A stretch of DNA of 63,917 bases, the filler included, from Octopus bimaculoides (Eukaryota): assembly GCF_001194135.2 (NCBI RefSeq). It is 7 parts of 6 records of this genome, joined end to end, with 100 filler letters (N's around TTAATTAATTAA, not from the genome) between each part and the next. Parts side by side here need not be neighbours in the genome. Positions count along the whole stretch, not along the records: positions 1 to 30,301 come from NC_068988.1; 6 more parts are not named here. One strand, 5' to 3'. The notes beneath the pieces are model-generated. The model did no database searches, was not told the DNA's origin, and worked only from the letters and a program-made list of their open reading frames with translations. This document shows positions 13,228-30,301 of the stretch, piece by piece; position 1 is the stretch's first letter; every line of letters starts with the position of its first letter. The translations under genes were made by a program, and so were the position numbers.

Positions 13228-15386
13228 CAAGAGTTGTCACTGTTTCACAGTATCTCGGAATTCTCATTCTGCGATTTTCATATCTATCTCCAAGAAATTC
13301 CTGAGGATCCTGGAAATTATGTTCTAATTAATATTTAAACCTAACACGCCCTTTACAAATTCCATACATCCTCATACCTCATACTTCAATTTTATCGTAT
13401 GTTTCGTTTTTATTTTCAGATGAATGTAAATACATTATTAACTAGAATGTCAGATAATATTGAAGAATACTATTGTATGTGTGAGTTATAAATTTAAATA
13501 TCCTTCTCTGCGTTCCGTAAACAGTTGATCACAATGCCGCACATGGTAGTAGAGATACAAGATGGTGTCTTTAAGTCGCAAAACATTGAATATTTCTCTT
13601 TAATCACAGGTAGCTGCACTGGGCTGAATGCTTGTACCAGAGTTTAATCAATGACCATCCCTACTTTAGAGAATATGAATCCGCTACGCTATATGTCAAA
13701 GTAAATCTAATAGCTAAAATAACAACGCTTATTCTAAGTGCACATCTTGTAAGAGAATGCGCAAAGCGAGTAAGTTACTTTCCAAATGACTAGTGACATC
13801 GTTCACATTACAGAGCCGCTGCAGATAAACTATTTTCTGTAAATTCCGTACCCGGAGATGTCATATGTTATTAACTGATAGACATATTAATAGACTGATT
13901 TAATACTGTTTGGAAACTCATAATGATCAACACACGTAAATCACCAAGATTTAATTTGGGCTAGAATATATGAGATACAGACTAGGTGACAGATGGTCAA
14001 TATATACCATACTTTCTGATGGAAAGAATAAACTCAGAATAAGGGAAGAACACAATAGTAAAGTTGAAGGGGCGCTTAAATGCAAAACAAGGAATTAATT
14101 AGTGTACTAGATTAATTCATGGTCATTAATTAGGATTCATGTAATTCCATTGCACTTATTTCTTGGGAAACGCATGAAGTCTATCGCTTAGATTTCCTTT
14201 ATATGAAGAGCTTTGAATATATCTCTGAAACTAAGAGAACGTCCTTTAACAGGACGATAGTGATCATTTTCTTCGCCTGATGTTAGAAAAACATTGTAAA
14301 TCTATGGACATAAGTTTAAGGTGGGTATTTAAAATGTATATCTTAATAAATTCTTAATCCAGTAGTAATACGTTTTAGTATAAAATATTTGAATATTACT
14401 CCATTTAAATTCAGTTTCACTCTTAATCATGAACATGATATACTACATACATGTAAAAGGAAATTTCTATCAAATAATTAACATTTATTTTCACTTTAAT
14501 TTATATTAACTAAAATTTAGTAAAATTAGATAATAACTACCTTTAGCAGAAGTATTCTACTGAAAAATTTGCAAAATCTTTTATGCAGAAAATTACCCAA
14601 ATTATAGATATATCATATCACCCTTCTCTCTCTCTATCTCTCTATATATGGACACACACACACAAACACACGCATGCACATACGCACACGCACACATACA
14701 TGCACACCCATACATATGAATGCATGTATTTACATGTGCGTACATATATATAATATACACCTGTGATTGTATCTATACATTCACATATTTATAAATATGA
14801 ATGTATCTCTGTCTACAATTCTCTCTCACTGTACACACACACACACACACAAATATATATATATATATAGATGCAGGTGTGTGTATATATACATGTTTAA
14901 TTGATCTCTTTATCTATGAATTGGAAGTGTAAATGTCTACCTACAGCTCAGAGTGATTTTCGAATTTTAGGATAGGCGAAATCTATGGAAATAAATTACT
15001 TAAATTAAATTAAATAGATAAATATATTTCTGTCGCTGATACATGTGAATATATTTTAAATGGATATGAATGAGGAAAACTTTAAAGCCTTCATGTTAAT
15101 AACCATTTTTACGTTTAGATTGATCATTTTTGCATTACTTGTATAGTGATTATATATAATTAATAATGTATGTGGAATAATTGCAGAAATTAGACTGAAA
15201 TATTGTTTGAAGTATAATGCATTGCTATTTTGGTGAATAACGTTGTTTTACGAAATATATTTTGTATCTCGATCATATAATCAAATATTGCACAGATCTA
15301 CAGAATATTCAAAACGCATATTCATATTATGCATATCATATGCGACTAAAGCTATGATATTAATAATCATTACAAGCAGCACTTAC

Positions 15387-15436
15387 CTGAGACCTCTCGT
15401 TCACTCATAATGTTGGACATTATTGTTAGAGAGGAT
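15387..15436 (-). CDS. Candidate host-gene exon, possibly first coding (MSNIMSEREVS)
   Basis: Acceptor ttttcttctaaatag| and donor cag|gtaagt; one open frame. No homology recognised. Confidence 0.3.
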
Positions 15437-17917: not shown

Positions 17918-19876
17918 ATTATGCATACATACATACATACATACATACTTATGCATGTATATATACATACATGTAAAAAAATTTACTGTATACTTTATTT
18001 CCAATTAAATTCCACTGACAAGTCAACAATAAACACAAGGCAAATATGAGACACTTGCCCAGCTATTGCGCAGTGTCATTATAGCATTTTACATTTGTTA
18101 GCACGTTTGCATTAGTTATAACTCAGATTTATGTTTAGCTCATAAGTCCCAGCTGCCAATATATCCCGCTAATATTCTCCATTCCAATTAAATGCTGATT
18201 CTTCAGTTATTTATCCATTATATTTATTTCTTCTTAAATATTTCATTTGTTGCTGACTGTATTTATTATTTAATACCTGTTGCTATCCGACACCTTAAAC
18301 ATTTATTTGTAGCCTCAAAGCATTATCAGCTAAGAAGAATCTATAGACGCCACAATTGTTGTAATGTCCAATATATAATAACATCATATTGCCTGCAGAA
18401 GAGAGAACAGTCTTTTGAAAATCATCTGCAGAATCACAATGTGCAATTCGCATCTCTGAGACCATATGTTATTAATTATTCAAGAGGACCTGTGTAGGAA
18501 ATATTTACCCCTAATTAATAGAATTCAATTAATCGAGATCCATCACATAGCAGAGAATTTAATAGCATAATTCAACATTGTAATTATACAAGCGAGTGTA
18601 GTTATCCAACCGTCTTGAAGAATCATAATTCGGAATTAAGAAATGGGTCGAGATAATATACATAAACTACATCAGCTTGAAAACTGATACTTAATCTGAT
18701 TATAAATATGACGTTGATGTTGATAACCAGCCGTTGTTATCTCCTATTTTGGCAAAGTAATTAAAATAATGCTATTCATTAAATAATATCGTTTACGTTT
18801 CACCATTTTACATAGACATTCCATATCTCGTTTGTCGCTAAACTCTAGTCATATGAACACAAAATAGCTTGCTGTTTAAGCTTATATTGAGCAAAAATAT
18901 ATCTATGTCGTTTCTTTTTATCCAATTTCTTTTTATATTTTTCTGTGCCATTGTATTATTCCGTCCAAACCTACCACCATTAATTTCAAAATCTTCACTT
19001 GTATACGTGCATATATATATATATATATATANNNNNNNNNNNNNNNNNNNNNNNNNNNNNNNNNNNNNNNNNNNNNNNNNNNNNNNNNNNNNNNNNNNNN
19101 NNNNNNNNNNNNNNNNNNNNNNNNNNNNNNNNNNNNNTTATATACATCTGTATCTCTTTATATATATATATATTACACACACACAAATACACACACATAT
19201 AGTGATAAATTAAATTTACAATTTTCGATATAGATGCTTTTGTATGTTACATTTACATTGATAATAAATCGGTTTGTGAGTGTCTGTAACATATCAATTG
19301 AAGATAAATATTTGAAAGTTTATAGTTTCCGTTTAAATACAATGAATGATCGGTCAGTGTACCTTTAAATGATCCGCAAAGTTGTGATGTAAATCATTCT
19401 GTACAATTTCTTAATCTGTTTACAACCATTATACAAATCGTACATTGTTTTGCTAATAAATTTTTCTCTTTAAAACCAAATTGATCGTCTTTGGTTTTAA
19501 CTGAAGTATGCTATTTTGAGTACATTCGCTTTCAACTGGGAAGTTATAAACAACATAACGTTCTTTTTTTTTTTATGAAGAGCTCACCAAGAGAGATTAT
19601 AGCGTAACGGCTGATGCACGAAATAAAATTTCATGTGATATAAGCAGTCTATTTATAAGGATCATGTCTAGACACCTGAGGCTGTTTACAAGCCGAGTAA
19701 AAAGACTTCCACTAACGCACTGGTTCACTAAACTGATTTCATTTGATATAGAAGCAAACAGAAACAAGGGAATTGCAACATTGCAATAACAAATAAACAG
19801 GCGCGATAAAAACAATGGTATATGTATATATTGAGGAAATATCTAATATAATTGAAATGTCGCAATATATTCTTAC

Positions 19877-19975
19877 CTCACATATTTATTTACTTCCCCA
19901 CTTCCTTGTCTCGTAAAATTTCAGTTCTTGTAAAAATAAAATTCTCACTTACCTGCAGAAAAAAGTAGAAAAACA
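19877..19975 (-). promoter_or_regulatory. Recursive splice site (AG|GT at 19953/19952) with a 76-nt cryptic RS-exon and downstream donor
   Basis: Minus strand TTTTTCTACTTTTTTCTGCAG|GTAAGTGAG, then after 76 nt GAG|GTAAGA (GT at 19876-19875). Confidence 0.6.
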
Positions 19976-20258
19976 TGTGTAAATATAAGTGAAAACATCG
20001 GGTATATTTAATTAAAAAGACAAAACATTGATGTCTTGAACCAAAAATCGATTATTACTAACACTATGCAGGAATAGGATTATGACTAATACTTCTTATT
20101 TGTTAGAATGTATTGTTGGTCATCGAAATATATCGATGAAACACACGCATCTCCACACAAAAAAGAACTAGTTGAAATAGGTTTGTATATTCTAAATTTA
20201 CTTTTAGTCTTTAAAAAATTGAAAGATATGTATTTACATATGAGTGTGTGCGTGCATA

Positions 20259-20328
<70 letters not shown>

Positions 20329-20939
20329 NNNNNNNNNNNNNNNNNNNNNNNNNNNNNNNNNNNNNNNNNNNNNNNNNNNNNNNNNNNNNNNNNNNNNNNN
20401 NNNNNNNNNNNNNNNNNNNNNNNNNNNNNNNNNNNNNNNNNNNNNNNNNNNNNNNNNNNNNNNNNNNNNNNNNNNNNNNNNNNNNNNNNNNNNNNNNNNN
20501 NNNNNNNNNNNNNNNNNNNNNNNNNNNNNNNNNNNNNNNNNNNNNNNNNNNNNNNNNNNNNNNNNNNNNNNNNNNNNNNNNNNNNNNNNNNNNNNNNNNN
20601 NNNNNNNNNNNNNNNNNNNNNNNNNNNNNNNNNNNNNNNNNNNNNNNNNNNNNNNNNNNNNNNNNNNNNNNNNNNNNNNNNNNNNNNNNNNNNNNNNNNN
20701 NNNNNNNNNNNNNNNNNNNNNNNNNNNNNNNNNNNNNNNNNNNNNNNNNNNNNNNNNNNNNNNNNNNNNNNNNNNNNNNNNNNNNNNNNNNNNNNNNNNN
20801 NNNNNNNNNNNNNNNNNNNNNNNNNNNNGAATGGGGTAAATAGAAATGATATAAAATTCAGCGCAACGAAATTTTAGTTTCGTCAGGATAAAGGCACTAG
20901 ATATAATAATAGTTCAAAGTTCTACTAAACACGGAACTC

Positions 20940-22770
20940 ATAGATTTGATCTTGAGAACACTGATAACAATAGTGCCCTGTTTTCAGTTGACCAGGAAGC
21001 TGTTCGCTATTTGGGATTCCAAACACAACCAGTTTCAGACAAGAAATAGCAGGGTGACAATGAATATTCACAATTAAAATAACTTAACGACAGGGAATGT
21101 CTGAAAGCATTTAGTTTCTACTAATTTCAATGACGCGGACAGAGTAGATATATTGATTTCTCTATCTAGACGATCCTGGAAAGTCATACTTAGTACTTTC
21201 GGCATTAAACGGTAGAGTGTTGGTAGAGAGTGAAAGAATTCTAAATTTAAGGCACGACACAGAGAAAATTGGACATAAAGATTGCTTCACAGTGAATCAA
21301 GTGCCAAACAGGCAGAATAGAAATCAAGTATGTACTAAAATACAGTACAAACAGGAAACACACCCATATTTTGCATGTGGATGTCTACTGAAAGAAAAAG
21401 AAAAAAGCTGCCCATTTAAAGTGGAATGTTTCCATTGTGGAAAAATTGGACACGTAAAAGCGCTCTATAAAACCAAGATGACAAAACGTTGGAACAAAGA
21501 AAAAAAGAATAAACAAGATGTTGTCGAAAGAAAATAGTTAGTGACAAAGAGGAGATTCATAAATGTAAAAATTGTAAATATAAGAATAAAAACGCAGTTA
21601 GATATTGGAAGTGATATTACCATTGTGAATGAAGAAACTTGGAAGTATATCGGTAAGCCAAAATTAAGTAAATCTACAAAAGTAGCACACTGTAAAAGAT
21701 TGTATTTTGTAGGTGAATTTGTGTGTAATGCGACATTAAGTGACAAAATGAAAACGGCAAAAGTACAGGTGTTAAAATATTCAGTTAATCTATTCGGCAG
21801 AGTGGATGGAATTGTTGAAATTGTAGTATACACCTGTAAGTGTTTTGTGCGGGAATATAGTCGGTTCATTCGAAGCTTCGAATGTGACTGAGGGATTGAA
21901 ACGAAATATAAACCATTTATTTCCAGATGTTTTTTCGGATGAACTGGGCTGCTGCACGAAAACGAAGGCAAAAAATGTAGTAAAATAAGTGCTTAAGACA
22001 AAACGTAATGTATCACTCGCGGCACTGGAAGAGGTAAATAAGAAATTTGAAAGACTTGAAAGCCTACGAATAATCAAGAAGACGGACCACTCAGATTGGG
22101 CAGCACCTACAATCTACATAAAAAAGAAAAACAAGTTAAGAGTTTGTGCAGATTTTTCAACGGGGTTAACGATTGCTTAAAGAAGGTTGGAGAGGATGTG
22201 CTCCAGCAGCAAAACTACCGACGAGGAAAAGTGAACATTGGCCAAAAGTAGATGTTCCTTAGTCGAGATTATACATTGATTTTTGCATGAGCTGCATGAG
22301 ACGATAGTGTCCGATTATAGTGTCTGATGATGAAACGTAATTTGTAACTTTTGAGTTTAAAATGTTTCGTAAAATGTTCGCTGTTGAACATGTAACTACT
22401 GCGCTATACCTTCCCAGACCTAACGGACAAGCAGAACGCTTTGTCGATACATTCAAGAGAGCCCTAATAAAGTCGAATAAGAAAGTTACAGATGAGGTAG
22501 CTCTACAACAATTCCTAGGAGTATACCGAGTGACACCAAATCCAAACACATCAGCAGGTATATCACCAGCGGGCCCGGTGTGTGCGTGGAAAATAAAATA
22601 AGTCATTGACAAATTGCTACCCGGTACGAAAGGAAAAATTGAAATGAACAGTACAGCAAGCTATTTAAAATGTTGGTTAACATGTATATAAGAACGGAAA
22701 ACACAGTTGGGAAGATGGCGTGTTAACGAAACGCATTGGAAAAATGCTATACTTGTTAAAGGTAAGAAAA
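20940..22770 (+). mobile_element. Ty3/Gypsy LTR retrotransposon remnant (K02A2.6-like), internally deleted
   Basis: Gag knuckle CFHCGKIGHVKALY; protease LDIGSDITIV; RT start IIKKTDHSDWAAPTIYIKKKNKLRVCADFSTGL; integrase YLPRPNGQAERFVDTFKRAL..FLGVYRVTPNPNT; C-terminal YKNGKHSWEDGVLTKRIGKMLY. Many stops and frameshifts; no LTR visible. Confidence 0.92.
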
Positions 22771-23989: not shown

Positions 23990-24081
<92 letters not shown>

Positions 24082-24469
24082 CATCATTATTATTATTATA
24101 GTTATGGAAAAATCTAGCCCTTAGCCAAATAGAATTAGAATAGTGTTTTTAAAGTGTCCGTTATTAATTGGATGTGATAATCAAACGTTTATCATTATTT
24201 TTTTTTGCTTTTCGAAATAAAAAAAAATATAAAATATAAATATCAATGGCGTTAAGATTCTGCGGAGTAAAACGAACTACTTCGGAACGCTTATGAATTT
24301 ATTTTTTTGCATTTTCTAATCTCAATTGTAAAATACAGAATTTCATCATTGCCACACATTATAAGGGAATATGTAGTACAAAGAAGTTCCATTACTTCTC
24401 TACATCCATAACAATCAAATTACCATGATAAATAATTGTTGTTGCTAGTACTACCACCACAAGTAATAT

Positions 24470-24534
<65 letters not shown>

Positions 24535-24540
24535 TAATAA
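23990..24540. repeat. (TTA)n tract (23990-24100) and (TAA)n tract (24472-24540)
   Basis: Read directly. These explain the poly-Y, poly-I and poly-L ORFs. Confidence 0.97.
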
Positions 24541-25434
24541 TGCCGTTGATGCTCTTACTGGCCATTGGGCATATAATGCTGTTTTTAAAATGTTCAAAAG
24601 CTATAATGAGATGAATTCAAGCAATGGTGTTCAGTTACGATTTTGCTCAGAAAGACAATTGAAAGTTAATGGGATTCATCATTAAAATACAAACGCATAA
24701 CTGTTGGAGCAGAAATAAATTATTCGCCCCGGAAGACAAACAGGCACATTTGTGATGTAAACCATACCAGGAGGCTTCTAGAAAGTAATGAAATTTTTTT
24801 CACGTGGCGTGCTTTACTTTAGATGCGGCTTGAGCAGAAATTTTAGGTGTAGGCAGATAAAAGATCATGAGGAAGACCTTCTGCACTTTCTCACAAAAGG
24901 AATTATCACAGTTAAGAGTGGAAGGTACAGTTGGACACACTCTCCTATCGATGTTACATCCAGGTTGGTAATGACTCGAATGTAGAAAGAAATATATAAA
25001 GAGAAAGGGAAGAAAGGTATACAAAGATGGAAACAGAAGTAGTGGAATCGGTGTAAATGTTGAAAGAGAAAAGACAAGAGAGAGAGGATGCGAGAGAAAT
25101 TGAAGAAGGTCTATACTATTCTGCATTTGTGTGTTCAAGTCTCAGAAACAATGTCACAAAGATCTATAAATTTATGCATTAAAAAATATATCGAGAGAGA
25201 CATTAAAGCAACGTGACAAAACCTTTGCAAATAAATGTGGCTGTTACACTTTTATCTTTAAATGGCAGCATTTCAAAAAGTAAATTTTCGAGATTCCCTG
25301 CATGTGTACAATGTATTAACAGTCTCTATGCTGCCTTAGACCGTGGAATTTTCCAAAGGTCCCAAACGTTTTCCTTTTCTTCCTCCTCCTCTTCCTCCTC
25401 ATCATCATCCTTTTATCACGAAAAATAGCTACCA

Positions 25435-25700
25435 ACTGAAGGTTGGGGTCGATGTCATCGAATTACTACCTTCCCGCAAACATTCTGGCCTTGTGCCAAA
25501 ATATTAAATCGCCCTTATTAAGGCGGCGAGCTGGCAGAATCGTTAGCATGCTAAGTTCTGAGTTCAGGTACCACCGAGGTCGATTTCACCTTTCATTCTT
25601 TCAGGGTCGATAAAATTTGTACCATTTACGCACTAGTTTCGATGTAATCGGTTTAATCCTTTCCCCCAAATATCCGACCTTGTGCTTCCAGTAGAAATAA
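25435..25700 (+). mobile_element. Tandem Deu/Nin-SINEs (3' fragment plus near-full copy from 25521)
   Basis: Same head and core (gaggtcgatttcacctttcattctttcagggtcgataaa) and ggccttgtgc tail. Confidence 0.85.
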
Positions 25701-25704
25701 TAAT

Positions 25705-26340
25705 TATTATTATTGAGTGAGAGAGCAGTGCAAGCCATCAAAGTGACATGGGGTAAAATATACGAAGCCCATTATATAAATCATGACTACCCATATGATA
25801 AGGGTACACCAGGCACATGCATCATAACCATATGTGCGCGAGTTGGTGATCTCATATCAAAATAAACAGCGCATGACCTAGCAGGTGGGGCCCAGTTAGA
25901 ATTTTTTTCAGGTCGAGTAGCCCATCCCGCTCAAAAGTTCCCTGAATAAGGTTTGTTTAAGGATGTTGAGCAAAACACCCATGTTTCCAAAGGTGAATTA
26001 TTCAAACCCCAAAGAATTACTCTCAACACATGGCTATGATGCTCCCCTACTACTTCTGTTCATGATCAGAAATGCACATATCGGCAGTCACCAAGGGACA
26101 TGCTCAACTGGTTAAGGTCAAACAACTAACAAGCAAATATGTGGTATTAAGCAGAATATTTGCTGTAGCCCATCATTTTATACCAAGACAAAAGAATGTA
26201 CATGATAACACTTCCAATCAGTTAAGCTCAGAAACCATGAGTATTATTATTATTATTATTGTTCAGTAGTTTTATTTTAATAACGTGCTTTCACTTCACT
26301 ACCGAGCGCAGCTCTGTGTGCCTTGGATATGTGCTATTAT
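25705..26340 (-). mobile_element. Two (AAT)n-tailed retroposon 3' fragments (possibly R4/Dong-related) stacked in a (TTA)n tract
   Basis: Minus strand ends ...gcactgctctctcactc(aat)n and ...gtgaagtgaaagcacgttattaaaataaaactactgaac(aat)n, each flanked by TTA repeats. The family assignment is inference. Confidence 0.45.
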
Positions 26341-26388: not shown

Positions 26389-28640
26389 TCATTTGACACT
26401 GCTATAATTTCTGTTATTTCTGTTATGATTTCTGAGGGAATTCACTTTACTCATGTTGTTGCACAATGAACAGTGCTTACCTCTATTGCGGCTGTTCTTT
26501 AAGGTACAGCGTGCAGATACTCCAATGTTCGTTTTCTTGGAGTCAGAAATAGAGGTCAATAATTCTCTTATATTCTTATTCCGTGTAAAGGCTACAATAG
26601 GCTGCTGAGGAAACAACTGTTTGAAACGAGGATATTTTTTCGCCATATGCTGGTAACTTTGATGCAGCACTTTTGAAATGCCAGCAAAATGTCGGTGCCA
26701 GCTAATCACTAAAAGAATTGTGTCATATTTTGCATTGTGTTTGCTAAAATTATGTGTGAAGGTTTGACTATTTTTGCTAATCTTAGCTATTTCGTTTGCT
26801 ATTTCCATTAATCGTAATCCACTGTAACCGTGTTTGACATAATGATATACAAAAGCATTTGCATGTTTCCAGTAATCCCCTATATCAGTACAAATCCGTT
26901 TTACCTTCAAAAATTGGGATTTCGAATTTGACCGAATAAGATGATATGGATGATCGGAGCGGCGGTGGAGATAAATGTGGTATGACGTGGGCTTGCAAAA
27001 TAACTCTGTCATTATTCTGCCTCCAGAAAATTTGAATTTTGTGTCCAAAGATTCAACGCTAGTTTTGAAAAACTAGACGTAAATTTTGTTTAACTTAAAG
27101 CCATAGTTTCTAGCATAACAGTAAGAGAAATACAAGAAGTTCATTAAACTATTCTGTGATCCTTCCCAAACAAAAAATACGTCATTAATGAACCGTAACC
27201 AAAGTATTGGTTCATGACCATGAAGGGATTTGAATGACTTCAGTAACTGTGTCTCGAATTTCGTCATGAAGACATTAGCGAAATTAACTGCCATGGGGGT
27301 ACCCATGGGGCAACCCTTCGTCTGGTGGCAAAATCTTTGTCTAAACTTCATTGTGTTACTAACACAAACCTCAATAATCTACAGAGAAAATGTGATGGAA
27401 TACTTTTATTTGACCGCTTTTCGAAGGCATCCATGTATGCTTCTACCCCTTCATTGTGGTCAGTATTGGGATATTAGGAAGAAACATCCATGGTTACCCC
27501 AAAACAGTTCTCGACACGGCCTCGGTGCTTAAAAAAGTTGTATATTTTAGATACACAATCAAAGGTATCCCGAATATAGGAACATGATCGATTTACGACG
27601 GGAAGTAAAAAGACACCCAACCATTCCGAAATTATGTCCGTGCAACATTCATATTCGCTGCAAATTGGGCGCATTGGAGGAACTCTTTAAACTTTTTCGG
27701 TATTTTAGGGAGACCATAGAATGCAGGTGTTCTTTCTCACCGTAAAATATTAGATTCGGCCTTATTAACGAAATTGTTTTCTCCATTTCTAGAATTATTT
27801 TGTCAAGTTCCTCTCTATAATTGAGGTTTGGATCGACAGGTAATTCTTCCTATGAAGTTTTGTCATTTAAAACTTCTGCAAAAGCCGAAATATATTCACT
27901 TTTCTCCATAATTACGATAGCGCCTCCCGTATCCGCCATCTTAATAACATTAGAATCATTATTTGCTAGACGCCGGATTGCATAACGTTGGGAATTCTTT
28001 CCAGGACTTCTTTCCATAACTTCTTTCCACTTGTTTTAAGGCTTTCTCTAATGCCTGCCCGACAAGATTCATGAAATTCCAGTAGTGCTTGTGAACGTCC
28101 ATCCCGAATTTTATCTGGATGCCGATTGCGATTCTTTTCAATCCAATTATGCCTGATTCGATCATCATTTTTATTTTCGGTAAGCGTAGGGTTCTTTGAC
28201 TCTTCGTTACCAGTTTTTTCAAAAAATTCTTTCAGCTTCTGACGGCGGACAAACTGAAATAACCCTTGAGCTAGTTTATTCTGATCGAAATTCTTAGCGC
28301 CTGGGCAAAAAAAAACTCAGTCCAAGATCTAAGACTGAGACATCATCGGGCGAAAGTTTTAGTTTAGATAAATTTATGACCGACGTATTCTCTAGTGTGA
28401 TGGTTTCTCTCGGGGAAGTGGTTTTCAGAGTCTTATTCTGATTAGATTCATGACTACATTTTGGGCTTTGCTCGAAATTTTCACTTAAAACGCGGAACCT
28501 ATTGGGCAATAAAATTTTATTCTGAATGTTTATATGAGAAGTTATAAATTTTAATCGTCTTTCTAGGGGTAATCTATTTCTGGGTGGGTGATAGAAAGTG
28601 AGTGACTTCTGTTTTTGTAGACATTTAAGAAATCTTTACT
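26389..28640 (-). mobile_element. Penelope-like element (C-terminal GIY-YIG type, probably Neptune-like): decayed N-terminus, RT, thumb and Cys linker
   Basis: Frameshifted fragments in the correct order: VINLSKLKLSPDDVSVLDLGLSF (PLE N-terminal motif); VIKMADTGGAIVIME; PAFYGLPKIP..PPMRPICS; VTMDVSS*YPN; QTKGCPMGTPMAVNFANVFM; WLRFINDVFFVW (IDD motif, one D>N); thumb PYHLIRSNSKSQFLKVKRIC; linker RGKHCSLC. Confidence 0.93.
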
Positions 28641-29135
28641 TTCAGGAAAGAAACTAATTTATTGTTTTCGAGGCAAAATCTTAAATGTGCTCGCATTTTT
28701 GATTGATCATATAAAAACTTCTCTGGAGCGTTTCCAATGACCAGTTCAAATGCATACGCCAGGGCAAAAAGGCCCCGATCATATGCGCCAACTTGGAGAT
28801 TAATTATATGAACTTGTTGAATTGTAGGAATAATGTTTGTTTGTGGTGAATACAACGTTGTTATTTGTGCCATTAGTTCCTGCGAAACTGATAAGTTCAA
28901 ACTGTCATGAATATAAACATCTTCGAAACAATTGGTTGACAAAACAAAAGGATTGTTCCTGGTATGATGAATGAACAGTGTGTAGTGCGGATTGTATGTT
29001 AGAAATTCCGTGTGAAAAAAAAGGGTTGGTTGTATTGGAATTTCTGGAAAATTTTAAGCCGGACGTCAATGAGATTATCACATAACATTTGTCCTGAAAG
29101 TAAAAAGTTTTCTCATATTTCAAACCAAATCTTCT
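28625..29135 (-). pseudogene. Decayed Ulp1/SENP-like (peptidase C48 fold) domain at the 5' end of the PLE
   Basis: LLSGQMLCDNLID...(frameshift)...FIHHTRNNPFVLSTNCFEDVYIHDSLN...IQQVHIINLQVGAYDRGLFALAYAFELVIGNAPEKFLYDQSKMRAHLRFCLENNKL. This follows the H.G..HW(F)V / IYDSL / Q.G..DCGLFA.A / YDQ..MR.HL..C pattern. The catalytic His and Cys positions read P and R. Confidence 0.75.
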
Positions 29136-30037
29136 CAGTTACCAGCATGTGGCGAAAAAATATCCTCGTTTCAAACAGTTATTTCCTCAGCCGCCTATTT
29201 TAGCCTTTACACGAAATAAGAATATAAGAGAATTATTGACCTCTATTTTGGACTTCAAGAAAACGAACATTGGAGTATCTGCACTCTCTACCTTAAAGAA
29301 CACCCGCAATAGAGGTAAGCCCTGTTCATTATGCAACAACATGAGTGAAGTGAATTCCATCAGAAATCATAATAGAAATGTTAAGATTTATACAGAAGGT
29401 GTAACATGTAAAGATTCCCATTTGGTGTACGCTACAGAATGCACGAAACACAACTTGATTTTTTGTTGGTTGTACAACAGAAAACTTAGACAGAAGGTTT
29501 AATGGGCACAGATTCGACGTCAAACGCAATAACAGTAGTTCAACAGAACTTGCTGAACATTTCGTTTCAAGCGGCTGCAATTTTGAAGAAGACTTGAAAG
29601 TGCATATTCTCAGAAAATATTCTGAATCTGCTTTACTTTCACTTCTCAGAATGTATGAGGAGAAATATGTTTTTGTGGGTTACTAACATTACGCCCTGGC
29701 GGAATGAATAAGATGACAGGAGAATATCATCAAATTTAAACAAAACTGTCTGATTAAATATTCTTCTTTTTCTCGTTTTTCTTTCCTTTTTTCTGTCGTC
29801 TTCATTTTTCTGTATGTTCCTGTCTCTTTCTTTTCGCCTATTATAAAATTGTAACTTAAAAACTGATGTCATTCCATCAACGCGTGGACGCTAGTTGCTC
29901 TCATTCATACTTTACGTTAAAATTTCTATAATTTTGAATTTTAATTTTTATCACTTATTTTGAACCTGACAAAGACAGACTTATTGTTGAAATATCATTC
30001 TACCAATAAAATATCTATTGAAATCAAATCGCACTCT
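29136..30037 (+). mobile_element. PLE 3' end (linker, GIY-YIG endonuclease, pseudo-LTR), inverted relative to 26389-29135
   Basis: AKKYPRFKQLFPQPPILAFTRNKNIRELL...RGKPCSLC...LVYATECTKHNLIF(fs)VGCTTENLDRRFNGHRFDVK...ELAEHF. The first ~240 nt match 26415-26660 on the opposite strand (about 16 mismatches, manual count). It ends at aataaa followed by (TTC)n(TTA)n. Confidence 0.92.
29962..30000 (+). ncRNA. Decayed minimal type I hammerhead ribozyme in the PLE pseudo-LTR
   Basis: gaac-CTGACAA-a-gaca-gacttat-tgtt-GAAA-tatc-attc. Three CpG-type back-mutations give gaac-CUGACGA-a-gaca...uguc-GAAA-uAUC/guuc. PLE pseudo-LTRs are known to carry such motifs. Confidence 0.7.
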
Positions 30038-30204
<167 letters not shown>

Positions 30205-30301
30205 TATGTTTGACTTTTGTTCTTCCTTTGTACAAGTTGGATCCAAGTCTCACCCATAGACCTCAAGAGACAACAAGTTAGAAGTTCATGTAGGTGTTAT
30301 G

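What the first reader, a model, noticed from the sequence alone, without database searches (positions are those of the whole stretch)
19877..19975. Consensus recursive splice site with a poison RS-exon on the minus strand
Seen: a long pyrimidine tract plus CAG runs directly into a perfect donor (TTTTTCTACTTTTTTCTGCAG|GTAAGT). A second strong donor (GAG|GTAAGA) lies 76 nt downstream. The 76-nt interval is purine-rich in its 3' half, is not a multiple of 3, and has stops in all three frames. Established: this is the architecture of Drosophila ratchet points and vertebrate RS-exons in very long introns, where a cryptic exon defines the site and is then skipped. Inference: a long minus-strand intron here is spliced recursively. 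I am not aware of a described cephalopod case.
Basis: partly seen in the sequence, partly recalled or inferred. Interest (0 to 1): 0.7.

Follow-up and report, generated by a model that had tools for sequence, protein, structure and literature searches.

The report
Candidate recursive splice site, octopus-like DNA
A near-perfect "acceptor joined to donor" splice motif, followed by a short stop-filled pseudo-exon, really is present on the minus strand and looks like the recursive splice sites of flies and vertebrates, but nothing available here shows that the site is transcribed, intronic, conserved or used.

Summary
On the minus strand, a pyrimidine tract plus CAG (ending at 19953) abuts a perfect donor GTAAGT (19952-19947). 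A second donor, GAG|GTAAGA, lies 76 nt downstream (GT at 19876). The 76-nt interval has stops in all three frames, and its 3' half is 79% purine.

This is the only such site in the window. Null models expect 0.001-0.003 core motifs per window, but 120-270 per 2.7-Gb genome. Requiring the second donor leaves roughly 4-8 per genome.

Every sequence-level feature of a ratchet point with a cryptic RS-exon is met, except the fly-specific TT at -5/-6 (here C, T).

The features that decide the matter could not be tested: location in a long sense-strand intron, conservation of the core, and junction, lariat or saw-tooth RNA evidence. The window holds no recognisable host exon, and the tools gave no annotation, RNA-seq data or orthologous DNA. 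The site also lies in a 1.19-kb contig between two assembly gaps.

A transposon ORF's closest named relative is from Octopus bimaculoides. The paper library holds no report of recursive splicing in a cephalopod or mollusc.

My estimates are about 0.4 that it is a used recursive site, about 0.4 that it is a chance or unused motif, and about 0.15 that it is an ordinary non-coding exon boundary. If real, it is a new member of a known kind.

The parts
19955..20034 (-). 80-nt AG-free zone upstream of the candidate 3' splice site. It contains branch-point-like yTnAy motifs: CTTAT (A at 19986, -34), TTCAC (A at 19990, -38) and TTTAC (A at 19980, -28).
   Evidence: The previous AG is at 20036-20035. 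An 80-nt AG-free gap is in the top 2.1% of AG-to-AG gaps in the window. It is partly explained by the T-rich composition and a weak 23-nt tandem repeat at 19970-20018.
19953..19973 (-). Pyrimidine tract plus CAG (candidate recursive 3' splice site): TTTTTCTACTTTTTTCTGCAG.
   Evidence: There are 15/16 pyrimidines at -20..-5, and the acceptor ranks 2nd of 1480 minus-strand AGs. Positions -6/-5 are C,T, not the TT found in 99.5% of fly ratchet points.
19947..19955 (-). Candidate regenerated 5' splice site CAG|GTAAGT. All 9 positions are complementary to the canonical U1 snRNA 5' end (established knowledge).
   Evidence: It ties for the best donor score (8.8 bits) of 1577 minus-strand GTs.
19877..19952 (-). 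76-nt candidate cryptic RS-exon: not a multiple of 3, with stops in all three frames.
   Evidence: The stops are uninformative on their own. No stronger donor lies between the two.
19877..19914 (-). Purine-rich 3' half of the candidate exon (30/38 purines; ACAAGGAAGTGGGGAAG), resembling GAA/GGAAG-type exonic splicing enhancers.
   Evidence: top 1.9% of 38-nt windows. The enhancer function is inference from general knowledge of purine-rich ESEs.
19871..19879 (-). Downstream donor GAG|GTAAGA, which would define the RS-exon. It is weaker than the upstream donor.
   Evidence: It scores 6.3 bits, 8th of 1577 GTs. It is the only donor above 2.4 bits within 76 nt, and the next above 3 bits is 365 nt downstream.

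Best explanation
This is a recursive splice site (ratchet point) with a cryptic 76-nt RS-exon, lying in a long intron transcribed from the window's minus strand.

Proposed mechanism (inferred, not shown):
1. U2AF/U2 recognise the branch point, pyrimidine tract and CAG ending at 19953. U1 binds the downstream donor at 19876. Helped by the purine-rich 3' half, these define the 76-nt unit as an exon.
2. The upstream exon is spliced to 19952. This recreates a perfect 5' splice site (exon-end|GTAAGT).
3. That site out-competes the weaker GAG|GTAAGA donor, so the 76 nt are removed with the rest of the intron and leave no trace in mRNA.
4. If the weaker donor is used instead, the out-of-frame, stop-containing exon is included. 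In a coding host that would lead to nonsense-mediated decay.

Shown here: the sequence architecture and its rarity. Inferred: transcription, intron context, use by the spliceosome and any selective value.
For: - All the sequence elements are present at the stated positions.
- The donor ties for best and the acceptor is second-best on the strand. The downstream donor is 8th of 1577 and weaker than the upstream one, the relation that predicts exon skipping in flies (PMC8605326).
- There is an 80-nt AG-free zone with yTnAy motifs at -28 to -38, and a purine-rich 3' half.
- The core is expected 0.001-0.003 times per window, and the full architecture about 3% of that.
- In every invertebrate tested, ratchet-point motifs are 4-22 times enriched on the sense strand of large introns, so such motifs there are mostly selected (PMC2773006).
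- Octopus has long neuronal genes (PMC7222433).
- The window is exon-free over 30 kb, which is compatible with a long intron.
Against: - There is no evidence of any kind that the minus strand is transcribed or that the site is intronic. An exon-free 30 kb fits intergenic DNA equally well.
- A 2.7-Gb genome should hold 120-270 chance cores and a few full architectures. Real genomes are more heterogeneous than my null models.
- Vertebrates with similarly large genomes show no sense-strand enrichment of such motifs, and no mollusc has been tested.
- C at -6 departs from the near-invariant TT of fly ratchet points.
- Conservation, the strongest published discriminator, could not be examined.
- Base composition of the window shows no consistent strand skew.
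- The site lies in a 1.19-kb contig between two gaps, so its orientation relative to its neighbours is only as good as the scaffolding.
- My weight matrices are approximate and not trained on octopus.
Confidence: 0.42

Rival explanations
1. It is a chance juxtaposition of splice-like motifs in AT-rich, repeat-rich non-coding DNA (intergenic, antisense to a gene, or intronic but silenced). It is not used by the spliceosome, or used only sporadically as a pseudo-exon, and has no selected function.
For: - Null models predict 120-270 equally good cores and about 4-8 full architectures per 2.7-Gb genome. A scan that reads many windows will meet some.
- No host exon, no coding signal and no consistent strand skew are seen in the window.
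- CAGGTAAGT occurs a second time in the window (15389) without any acceptor context, which shows the 9-mer arises by chance here.
- Part of the upstream T-rich tract belongs to a weak local 23-nt tandem repeat.
- Stops in all frames are the default in this DNA.
- Large vertebrate genomes carry such motifs at equal density on both strands of long introns.
Against: - Four independent rare features coincide: the perfect 9-nt donor, 15/16 pyrimidines, a second strong donor at an exon-like distance, and a purine-rich exon end. The joint chance rate is about 7e-10 to 1.5e-9 per nt.
- The relative donor strengths are those a working ratchet point needs.
- If the site is transcribed in sense, a unit this strong would probably be spliced whether or not it was selected.
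Confidence: 0.4
2. The site is an ordinary exon boundary of an unannotated or non-coding transcript. There are two versions. In one, the 76 nt are a conventionally included cassette, UTR or lncRNA exon that merely begins with GTAAGT. In the other, a T-rich non-coding exon ends at 19953 and CAG|GTAAGT is simply its donor.
For: - Both splice sites flanking the 76 nt are strong, and the exon end is purine-rich.
- Mammals have thousands of expressed exons that begin with a donor-like sequence (cited in PMC8605326).
Against: - It is not a coding exon. The ORF across the site (19893-20051) shares no three 5-residue words with any of 5.8 billion proteins. That database does hold Octopus bimaculoides RefSeq proteins.
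- The other two frames close within 18-19 codons upstream, and all frames of the 76 nt have stops.
- If an exon ended at 19953, the second donor at +76 would be a 3% coincidence.
- A perfect donor at the first base of an included exon should normally be re-spliced, unless repressed.
Confidence: 0.15

Closest known systems
Drosophila intronic ratchet points with cryptic RS-exons (Ubx, kuz, Bx and others; Hatton 1998, Burnette 2005, Duff 2015, Joseph 2018, Joseph & Lai 2021)
   Same: It has the (Y)nNCAG|GTAAGT core. A short downstream exon is closed by a second donor weaker than the regenerated one. The exon content is out of frame and stop-containing, and the pyrimidine tract is prominent.
   Different: Position -6 is C rather than the TT at -5/-6 seen in 196 of 197 fly sites. 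The exon is 76 nt against about 50 nt. Location in a long intron, ultraconservation of the core and constitutive use are all unknown here. The organism is a mollusc, not an insect.
Vertebrate RS-sites and RS-exons in long neuronal genes (Sibley 2015; Blazquez 2018)
   Same: It shows the exon-definition architecture, with competition between the regenerated 5' splice site and the RS-exon donor. Inclusion of the exon would introduce premature stops. The genome is large, with long neuronal genes.
   Different: Vertebrate sites were defined from junction reads, saw-tooth RNA profiles and conservation, none of which is available here. Vertebrates show no sense-strand enrichment of the motif, so the motif alone is weak evidence in that setting.
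Intronic pseudo-exons and 'zero-length exons' (e.g. rat tropomyosin, Grellscheid & Smith 2006, as cited in PMC2773006)
   Same: A sequence flanked by good 3' and 5' splice sites, with a donor directly after the acceptor, can exist without serving stepwise removal of a long intron.
   Different: Typical pseudo-exons have weaker sites or silencers. This unit has near-consensus signals and an enhancer-like purine tract.

Membership tests
Recursive splice site (ratchet point) with cryptic RS-exon | [quoted passage not shown] | tested here: met
   TTTTTCTACTTTTTTCTGCAG|GTAAGT at 19973-19947, minus strand. It is the only such site in 55.7 kb of both strands.
Recursive splice site (ratchet point) with cryptic RS-exon | Downstream splice donor delimiting a short RS-exon (exon definition) | tested here: met
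   GAG|GTAAGA lies 76 nt downstream, scores 6.3 bits and is 8th of 1577 GTs. No competing donor lies in between. The published length is 'short, variable, ~50 nt'.
Recursive splice site (ratchet point) with cryptic RS-exon | The regenerated donor is stronger than the RS-exon donor, so the exon is skipped | tested here: met
   8.8 against 6.3 bits with an approximate matrix, and 9/9 against 7/9 consensus positions. The matrix was not trained on octopus.
Recursive splice site (ratchet point) with cryptic RS-exon | RS-exon out of frame and/or carrying premature stops | tested here: met
   76 nt with stops in all 3 frames. This is weakly informative, because 39% of random 76-nt windows here do the same.
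Recursive splice site (ratchet point) with cryptic RS-exon | TT at -5/-6 of the acceptor (99.5% of Drosophila ratchet points) | tested here: not met
   -6 is C and -5 is T (criterion). This is a fly-specific preference, not shown to apply outside insects.
Recursive splice site (ratchet point) with cryptic RS-exon | Location on the sense strand inside a long intron (tens of kb or more) | not testable with these tools
   I recognised no host exon in the window. Protein and contig look-ups gave no annotation.
Recursive splice site (ratchet point) with cryptic RS-exon | Evolutionary conservation of the SA|SD core above that of the flanking intron | not testable with these tools
   No cephalopod genomic DNA collection is available. 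An exact 22-mer scan of metagenome contigs found nothing.
Recursive splice site (ratchet point) with cryptic RS-exon | Splicing intermediates: upstream-exon-to-site junction reads, lariats from the regenerated donor, and a saw-tooth profile in total or nascent RNA | not testable with these tools
   No RNA-seq access.
Ordinary coding exon boundary | An open reading frame across the boundary that matches a known or predicted protein | tested here: not met
   No protein shares three 5-mers with the 53-aa ORF across the site. The other frames close within 18-19 codons.
U1 snRNA gene or pseudogene on the plus strand (ACTTACCTG) | Match to the U1 covariance model | tested here: not met
   Rfam found no match at gathering score in the whole piece. 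At E<=1 in 19138-20328 it found only sub-threshold hits on microsatellites.

The most novel reading that the evidence does not exclude
This is a functional ratchet point with a cryptic RS-exon in a cephalopod. It would be the first recursive splice site described in a mollusc or lophotrochozoan. It would imply that exon-definition-based recursive splicing of long introns is pan-bilaterian and operates in the long neuronal genes of octopus.
Probability: 0.4. Interest if true: 0.5.

Novelty: new member of a known kind. Interest (0 to 1): 0.3.

Why it matters
Recursive splicing has been shown experimentally only in flies and vertebrates. Motif enrichment suggests it also operates in other insects and in sea urchin (PMC2773006).

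Cephalopods combine an invertebrate lineage with a vertebrate-sized genome and very long neuronal genes. They are therefore a natural test of whether ratchet points scale with intron length or are replaced by other mechanisms.

A validated site would extend the mechanism to Lophotrochozoa and give a concrete locus for RT-PCR. By itself, though, a single motif-level prediction adds little. The informative experiment is the genome-wide sense/antisense comparison plus total RNA-seq.

Tried and rejected
1. Finding the host gene.
- An exon scan on both strands (acceptor + open frame + donor) returned only transposon pieces and trivial hits.
- A concatenated query of 30 ORFs against the 5.8-billion-protein index gave no hits. 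I treat that negative as unreliable, because the same 227-aa ORF searched alone found P0061.
- Five exact-product look-ups of window ORFs found nothing on record ([mistyped start], 45, 49, 50).

2. Orthologous or paralogous DNA.
- An exact 22-mer scan of metagenome contigs gave 0 hits.
- No cephalopod genome collection is available.
- Self-BLAST shows that the 1.19-kb contig holding the site is unique within the window.

3. Is the motif carried by a transposon?
- There are no terminal inverted repeats of note, no repeat copies and no Pfam hit on the one neighbouring ORF scanned (19600-19842).
- This could not be tested genome-wide.

4. Is it a U1 pseudogene or other RNA gene on the plus strand? 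Rejected.

5. Is it the end of a coding exon at 19953? Rejected for coding exons, but not excludable for non-coding exons.

6. Transcription-associated strand skew. The whole piece shows none. The 13.3-21.1 kb stretch has G>C by 9% on the minus strand, but skews in the window track local repeats and transposons, so I give this no weight.

7. Sibley 2015 (PMC4471124) is not held, so I used the review PMC5126111 instead.

Full report
**What is in the sequence**

Read on the minus strand, the region is ...CACTTATATTTACACATGTTTTTCTACTTTTTTCTGCAG|GTAAGTGAGAATTTTATTTTTACAAGAACTGAAATTTTACGAGACAAGGAAGTGGGGAAGTAAATAAATATGTGAG|GTAAGAATA...

- The acceptor AG is at 19954-19953, and the abutting donor GT at 19952-19951.
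- The second donor GT is at 19876-19875, so the interval 19952..19877 is 76 nt.
- Positions -20..-5 hold 15 of 16 pyrimidines.
- All three frames of the 76 nt contain stops. Its 3' half has 30/38 purines against 20/38 in the 5' half.

The only correction is that the T-run begins at 19973.

**Is it more than chance?**

Within the 27.8 kb of non-N sequence, AGGTAAGT occurs twice, both times on the minus strand. Only this copy has a pyrimidine tract.

I scored all sites with an approximate metazoan splice-site matrix written from general knowledge, not trained on this organism:
- The donor ties for best of 1577 GTs on the strand.
- The acceptor is 2nd of 1480 AGs.
- The downstream donor is 8th of 1577 GTs.

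A third-order Markov model trained on the window produced the core (Y at -3, at least 14/16 Y, AGGTAAGT) 9 times in 400 Mb, or 2.25e-8 per nt. An empirical estimate uses the 8 of 1315 YAG sites that have such a tract, multiplied by the composition probability of GTAAGT. It gives about 5e-8 per nt.

That means 0.001-0.003 cores expected in the window, but 120-270 in a 2.7-Gb genome counted on both strands. Donors of 6 bits or more occur 14 times in 55.7 kb, so one falls 30-150 nt downstream about 3% of the time. This leaves roughly 4-8 full architectures per genome by chance. Real genomes are lumpier than these null models, so the true number is probably somewhat higher.

Two further features point the same way but are partly correlated with the T-rich tract. 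One is an 80-nt AG-free zone upstream (top 2.1% of gaps) containing yTnAy motifs at -28, -34 and -38. The other is the purine-rich exon end (top 1.9% of windows). Stops in all frames carry no weight, because 39% of 76-nt windows here have them.

**Surroundings**

The piece looks like a draft scaffold. It is 33% GC, has seven N gaps and is dense in microsatellites. The site lies in a 1,191-bp contig (19138-20328) with a gap on each side, so its orientation relative to its neighbours depends on the scaffolding.

The recognisable content is transposon debris:
- A retrovirus-like fragment on the plus strand at about 21157-22600, with weak zf-CCHC, integrase and protease matches.
- A reverse-transcriptase-bearing element on the minus strand at 26392-29053, with an inverted partial copy at 29137-29379.
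- A mariner-like remnant with 91-nt inverted ends at 11992-12645.

No tRNA or Rfam family reaches threshold. Relaxed Rfam hits near the site fall only on microsatellites, which also disposes of a U1-pseudogene reading of ACTTACCTG on the plus strand. The contig with the site has no copy elsewhere in the window.

A splice-aware scan for open exons on both strands returned only transposon pieces. The window therefore contains no host exon that I can recognise. It is either deep intronic or intergenic.

**Organism**

The 227-aa ORF of the reverse-transcriptase element has 2357 relatives in an exhaustive HMMER search. The closest named cluster is from Octopus bimaculoides, at 66% identity over the best-matching stretch (query residues 3-111): XP_014768538.1, plus a 'cadherin-23' gene model that has absorbed a copy of the element. 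This fits an octopod origin but does not prove the species.

**Gene context and external evidence**

This is where the analysis stops.
- The word-indexed protein search found nothing for a concatenated ORF query. That negative is unreliable, because the same ORF searched alone did find a hit.
- The 53-aa ORF across the site shares no three 5-mers with any of 5.8 billion proteins. The other two frames close within 18-19 codons upstream of 19953.
- Exact-product look-ups and a metagenome 22-mer scan found nothing.
- I had no access to a cephalopod genome annotation, RNA-seq data or orthologous DNA.

**Comparison with what is known**

Joseph & Lai 2021 (PMC8605326) describe Drosophila intronic ratchet points as follows:
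- They are tandem acceptor|donor motifs, ultraconserved, and lie in long introns.
- Each encompasses a cryptic RS-exon that is short (~50 nt, variable), poorly conserved, generally out of frame, and closed by a downstream donor.
- That downstream donor normally loses to the stronger regenerated donor.

Duff et al. (bioRxiv 10.1101/006163) found 197 such sites. They have a prominent pyrimidine tract, TT at -5/-6 in 99.5% of cases, and higher conservation than other AG|GT sites. Pai et al. (PMC6110457) confirm the strong motifs and the conservation. The vertebrate model adds that RS-exon inclusion introduces premature stops (PMC5126111).

The present site meets every sequence-level criterion except the fly-specific TT (here C, T). 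Intron context, conservation and splicing intermediates remain untested.

**Prior**

Shepard et al. 2009 (PMC2773006) counted ratchet-point motifs on the sense and antisense strands of introns longer than 50 kb:

| Species | Sense/antisense ratio |
|---|---|
| Fruit fly | 21.7 |
| Sea urchin | 8.2 |
| Beetle | 8.0 |
| Bee | 4.0 |
| Eight vertebrates | 0.9-1.5 |

No mollusc was included. Octopus is an invertebrate, but it has a vertebrate-sized genome and long neuronal genes (PMC7222433). If it behaves like the other invertebrates, a full-architecture site is more likely selected than accidental. If it behaves like vertebrates, chance is the better bet. Even then, a unit this strong would probably be spliced if it lies in sense inside an intron.

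Weighing these, I put about 0.42 on a used recursive site, about 0.40 on a chance or unused motif, and about 0.15 on an ordinary non-coding exon boundary.

**Novelty**

The paper library holds no report of recursive splicing in octopus, cephalopods or molluscs. The only co-occurrences of the terms are incidental. If validated, this would be a new member of a known kind in a new phylum. As it stands, it is a well-formed but unvalidated motif-level prediction.

Noticed in passing
window 26392-29053 (-) and 29104-29683 (+): A degenerate retroelement with a reverse-transcriptase ORF (RVT_1, E=2.7e-5) lies on the minus strand. A 243-nt inverted partial copy (29137-29379 against 26658-26416, 93% identical) sits head-to-head with it. 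I suspect a Penelope-like element, but no GIY-YIG domain was detected by Pfam. The closest named relative is an Octopus bimaculoides 'uncharacterized protein'. A 'cadherin-23' gene model in the same 90% cluster appears to have absorbed a copy.
   Followed up: partly
window 20855-22600 (+): A fragmented retrovirus-like (LTR-type) element with weak zinc-knuckle, aspartyl-protease and integrase matches, broken by frameshifts. It starts right after the assembly gap that lies 375 nt upstream (minus-strand sense) of the candidate site. No LTR copies were found in the window.
   Followed up: partly
window 11992-12645: A mariner-like remnant: a sub-threshold HTH_48 (Mos1 transposase) match at 12127-12279 (+), flanked by 91-nt inverted ends (11992-12081 against 12556-12645, 86% identical). 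It looks like an internally deleted, MITE-like copy.
   Followed up: partly
window 15381-15389 (-): A second perfect CAG|GTAAGT 9-mer on the minus strand, with no pyrimidine tract (7/20) and no open frame upstream. It is probably a chance donor-like site. Two copies against 0.26 expected under the Markov null is mildly unusual.
   Followed up: partly
window 6300-7130 and 25200-26100: Two GC-richer islands (about 40% GC against 33%) with several strong acceptor-like sites and short ORFs but no protein, tRNA or Rfam match. They may be SINE-like or other unclassified repeats, and are not similar to each other by BLASTN.
   Followed up: no
window 19138-20328: The candidate site sits in a 1,191-bp contig bounded by N gaps (19032-19137 and 20329-20828). 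The contig edges are microsatellites: (AC)n at 20258-20328 and TA/CA-rich sequence at 19151-19199. Placement and orientation in the scaffold therefore rest on scaffolding information only.
   Followed up: no
window 19970-20018: A weak 23-nt tandem repeat (2.2 copies, 77% matches; unit CACTTATATTTACCCATGTTTT on the minus strand) runs into the pyrimidine tract. It supplies the branch-point-like motifs and part of the AG-free zone, which hints that the acceptor context may have arisen by a local duplication.
   Followed up: no
window 23990-24099, 24464-24541, 30048-30207: Long trinucleotide microsatellites, (ATT)n/(TAA)n and (CTT)n-(TTA)n, are prominent in this piece alongside many dinucleotide arrays.
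   Followed up: no
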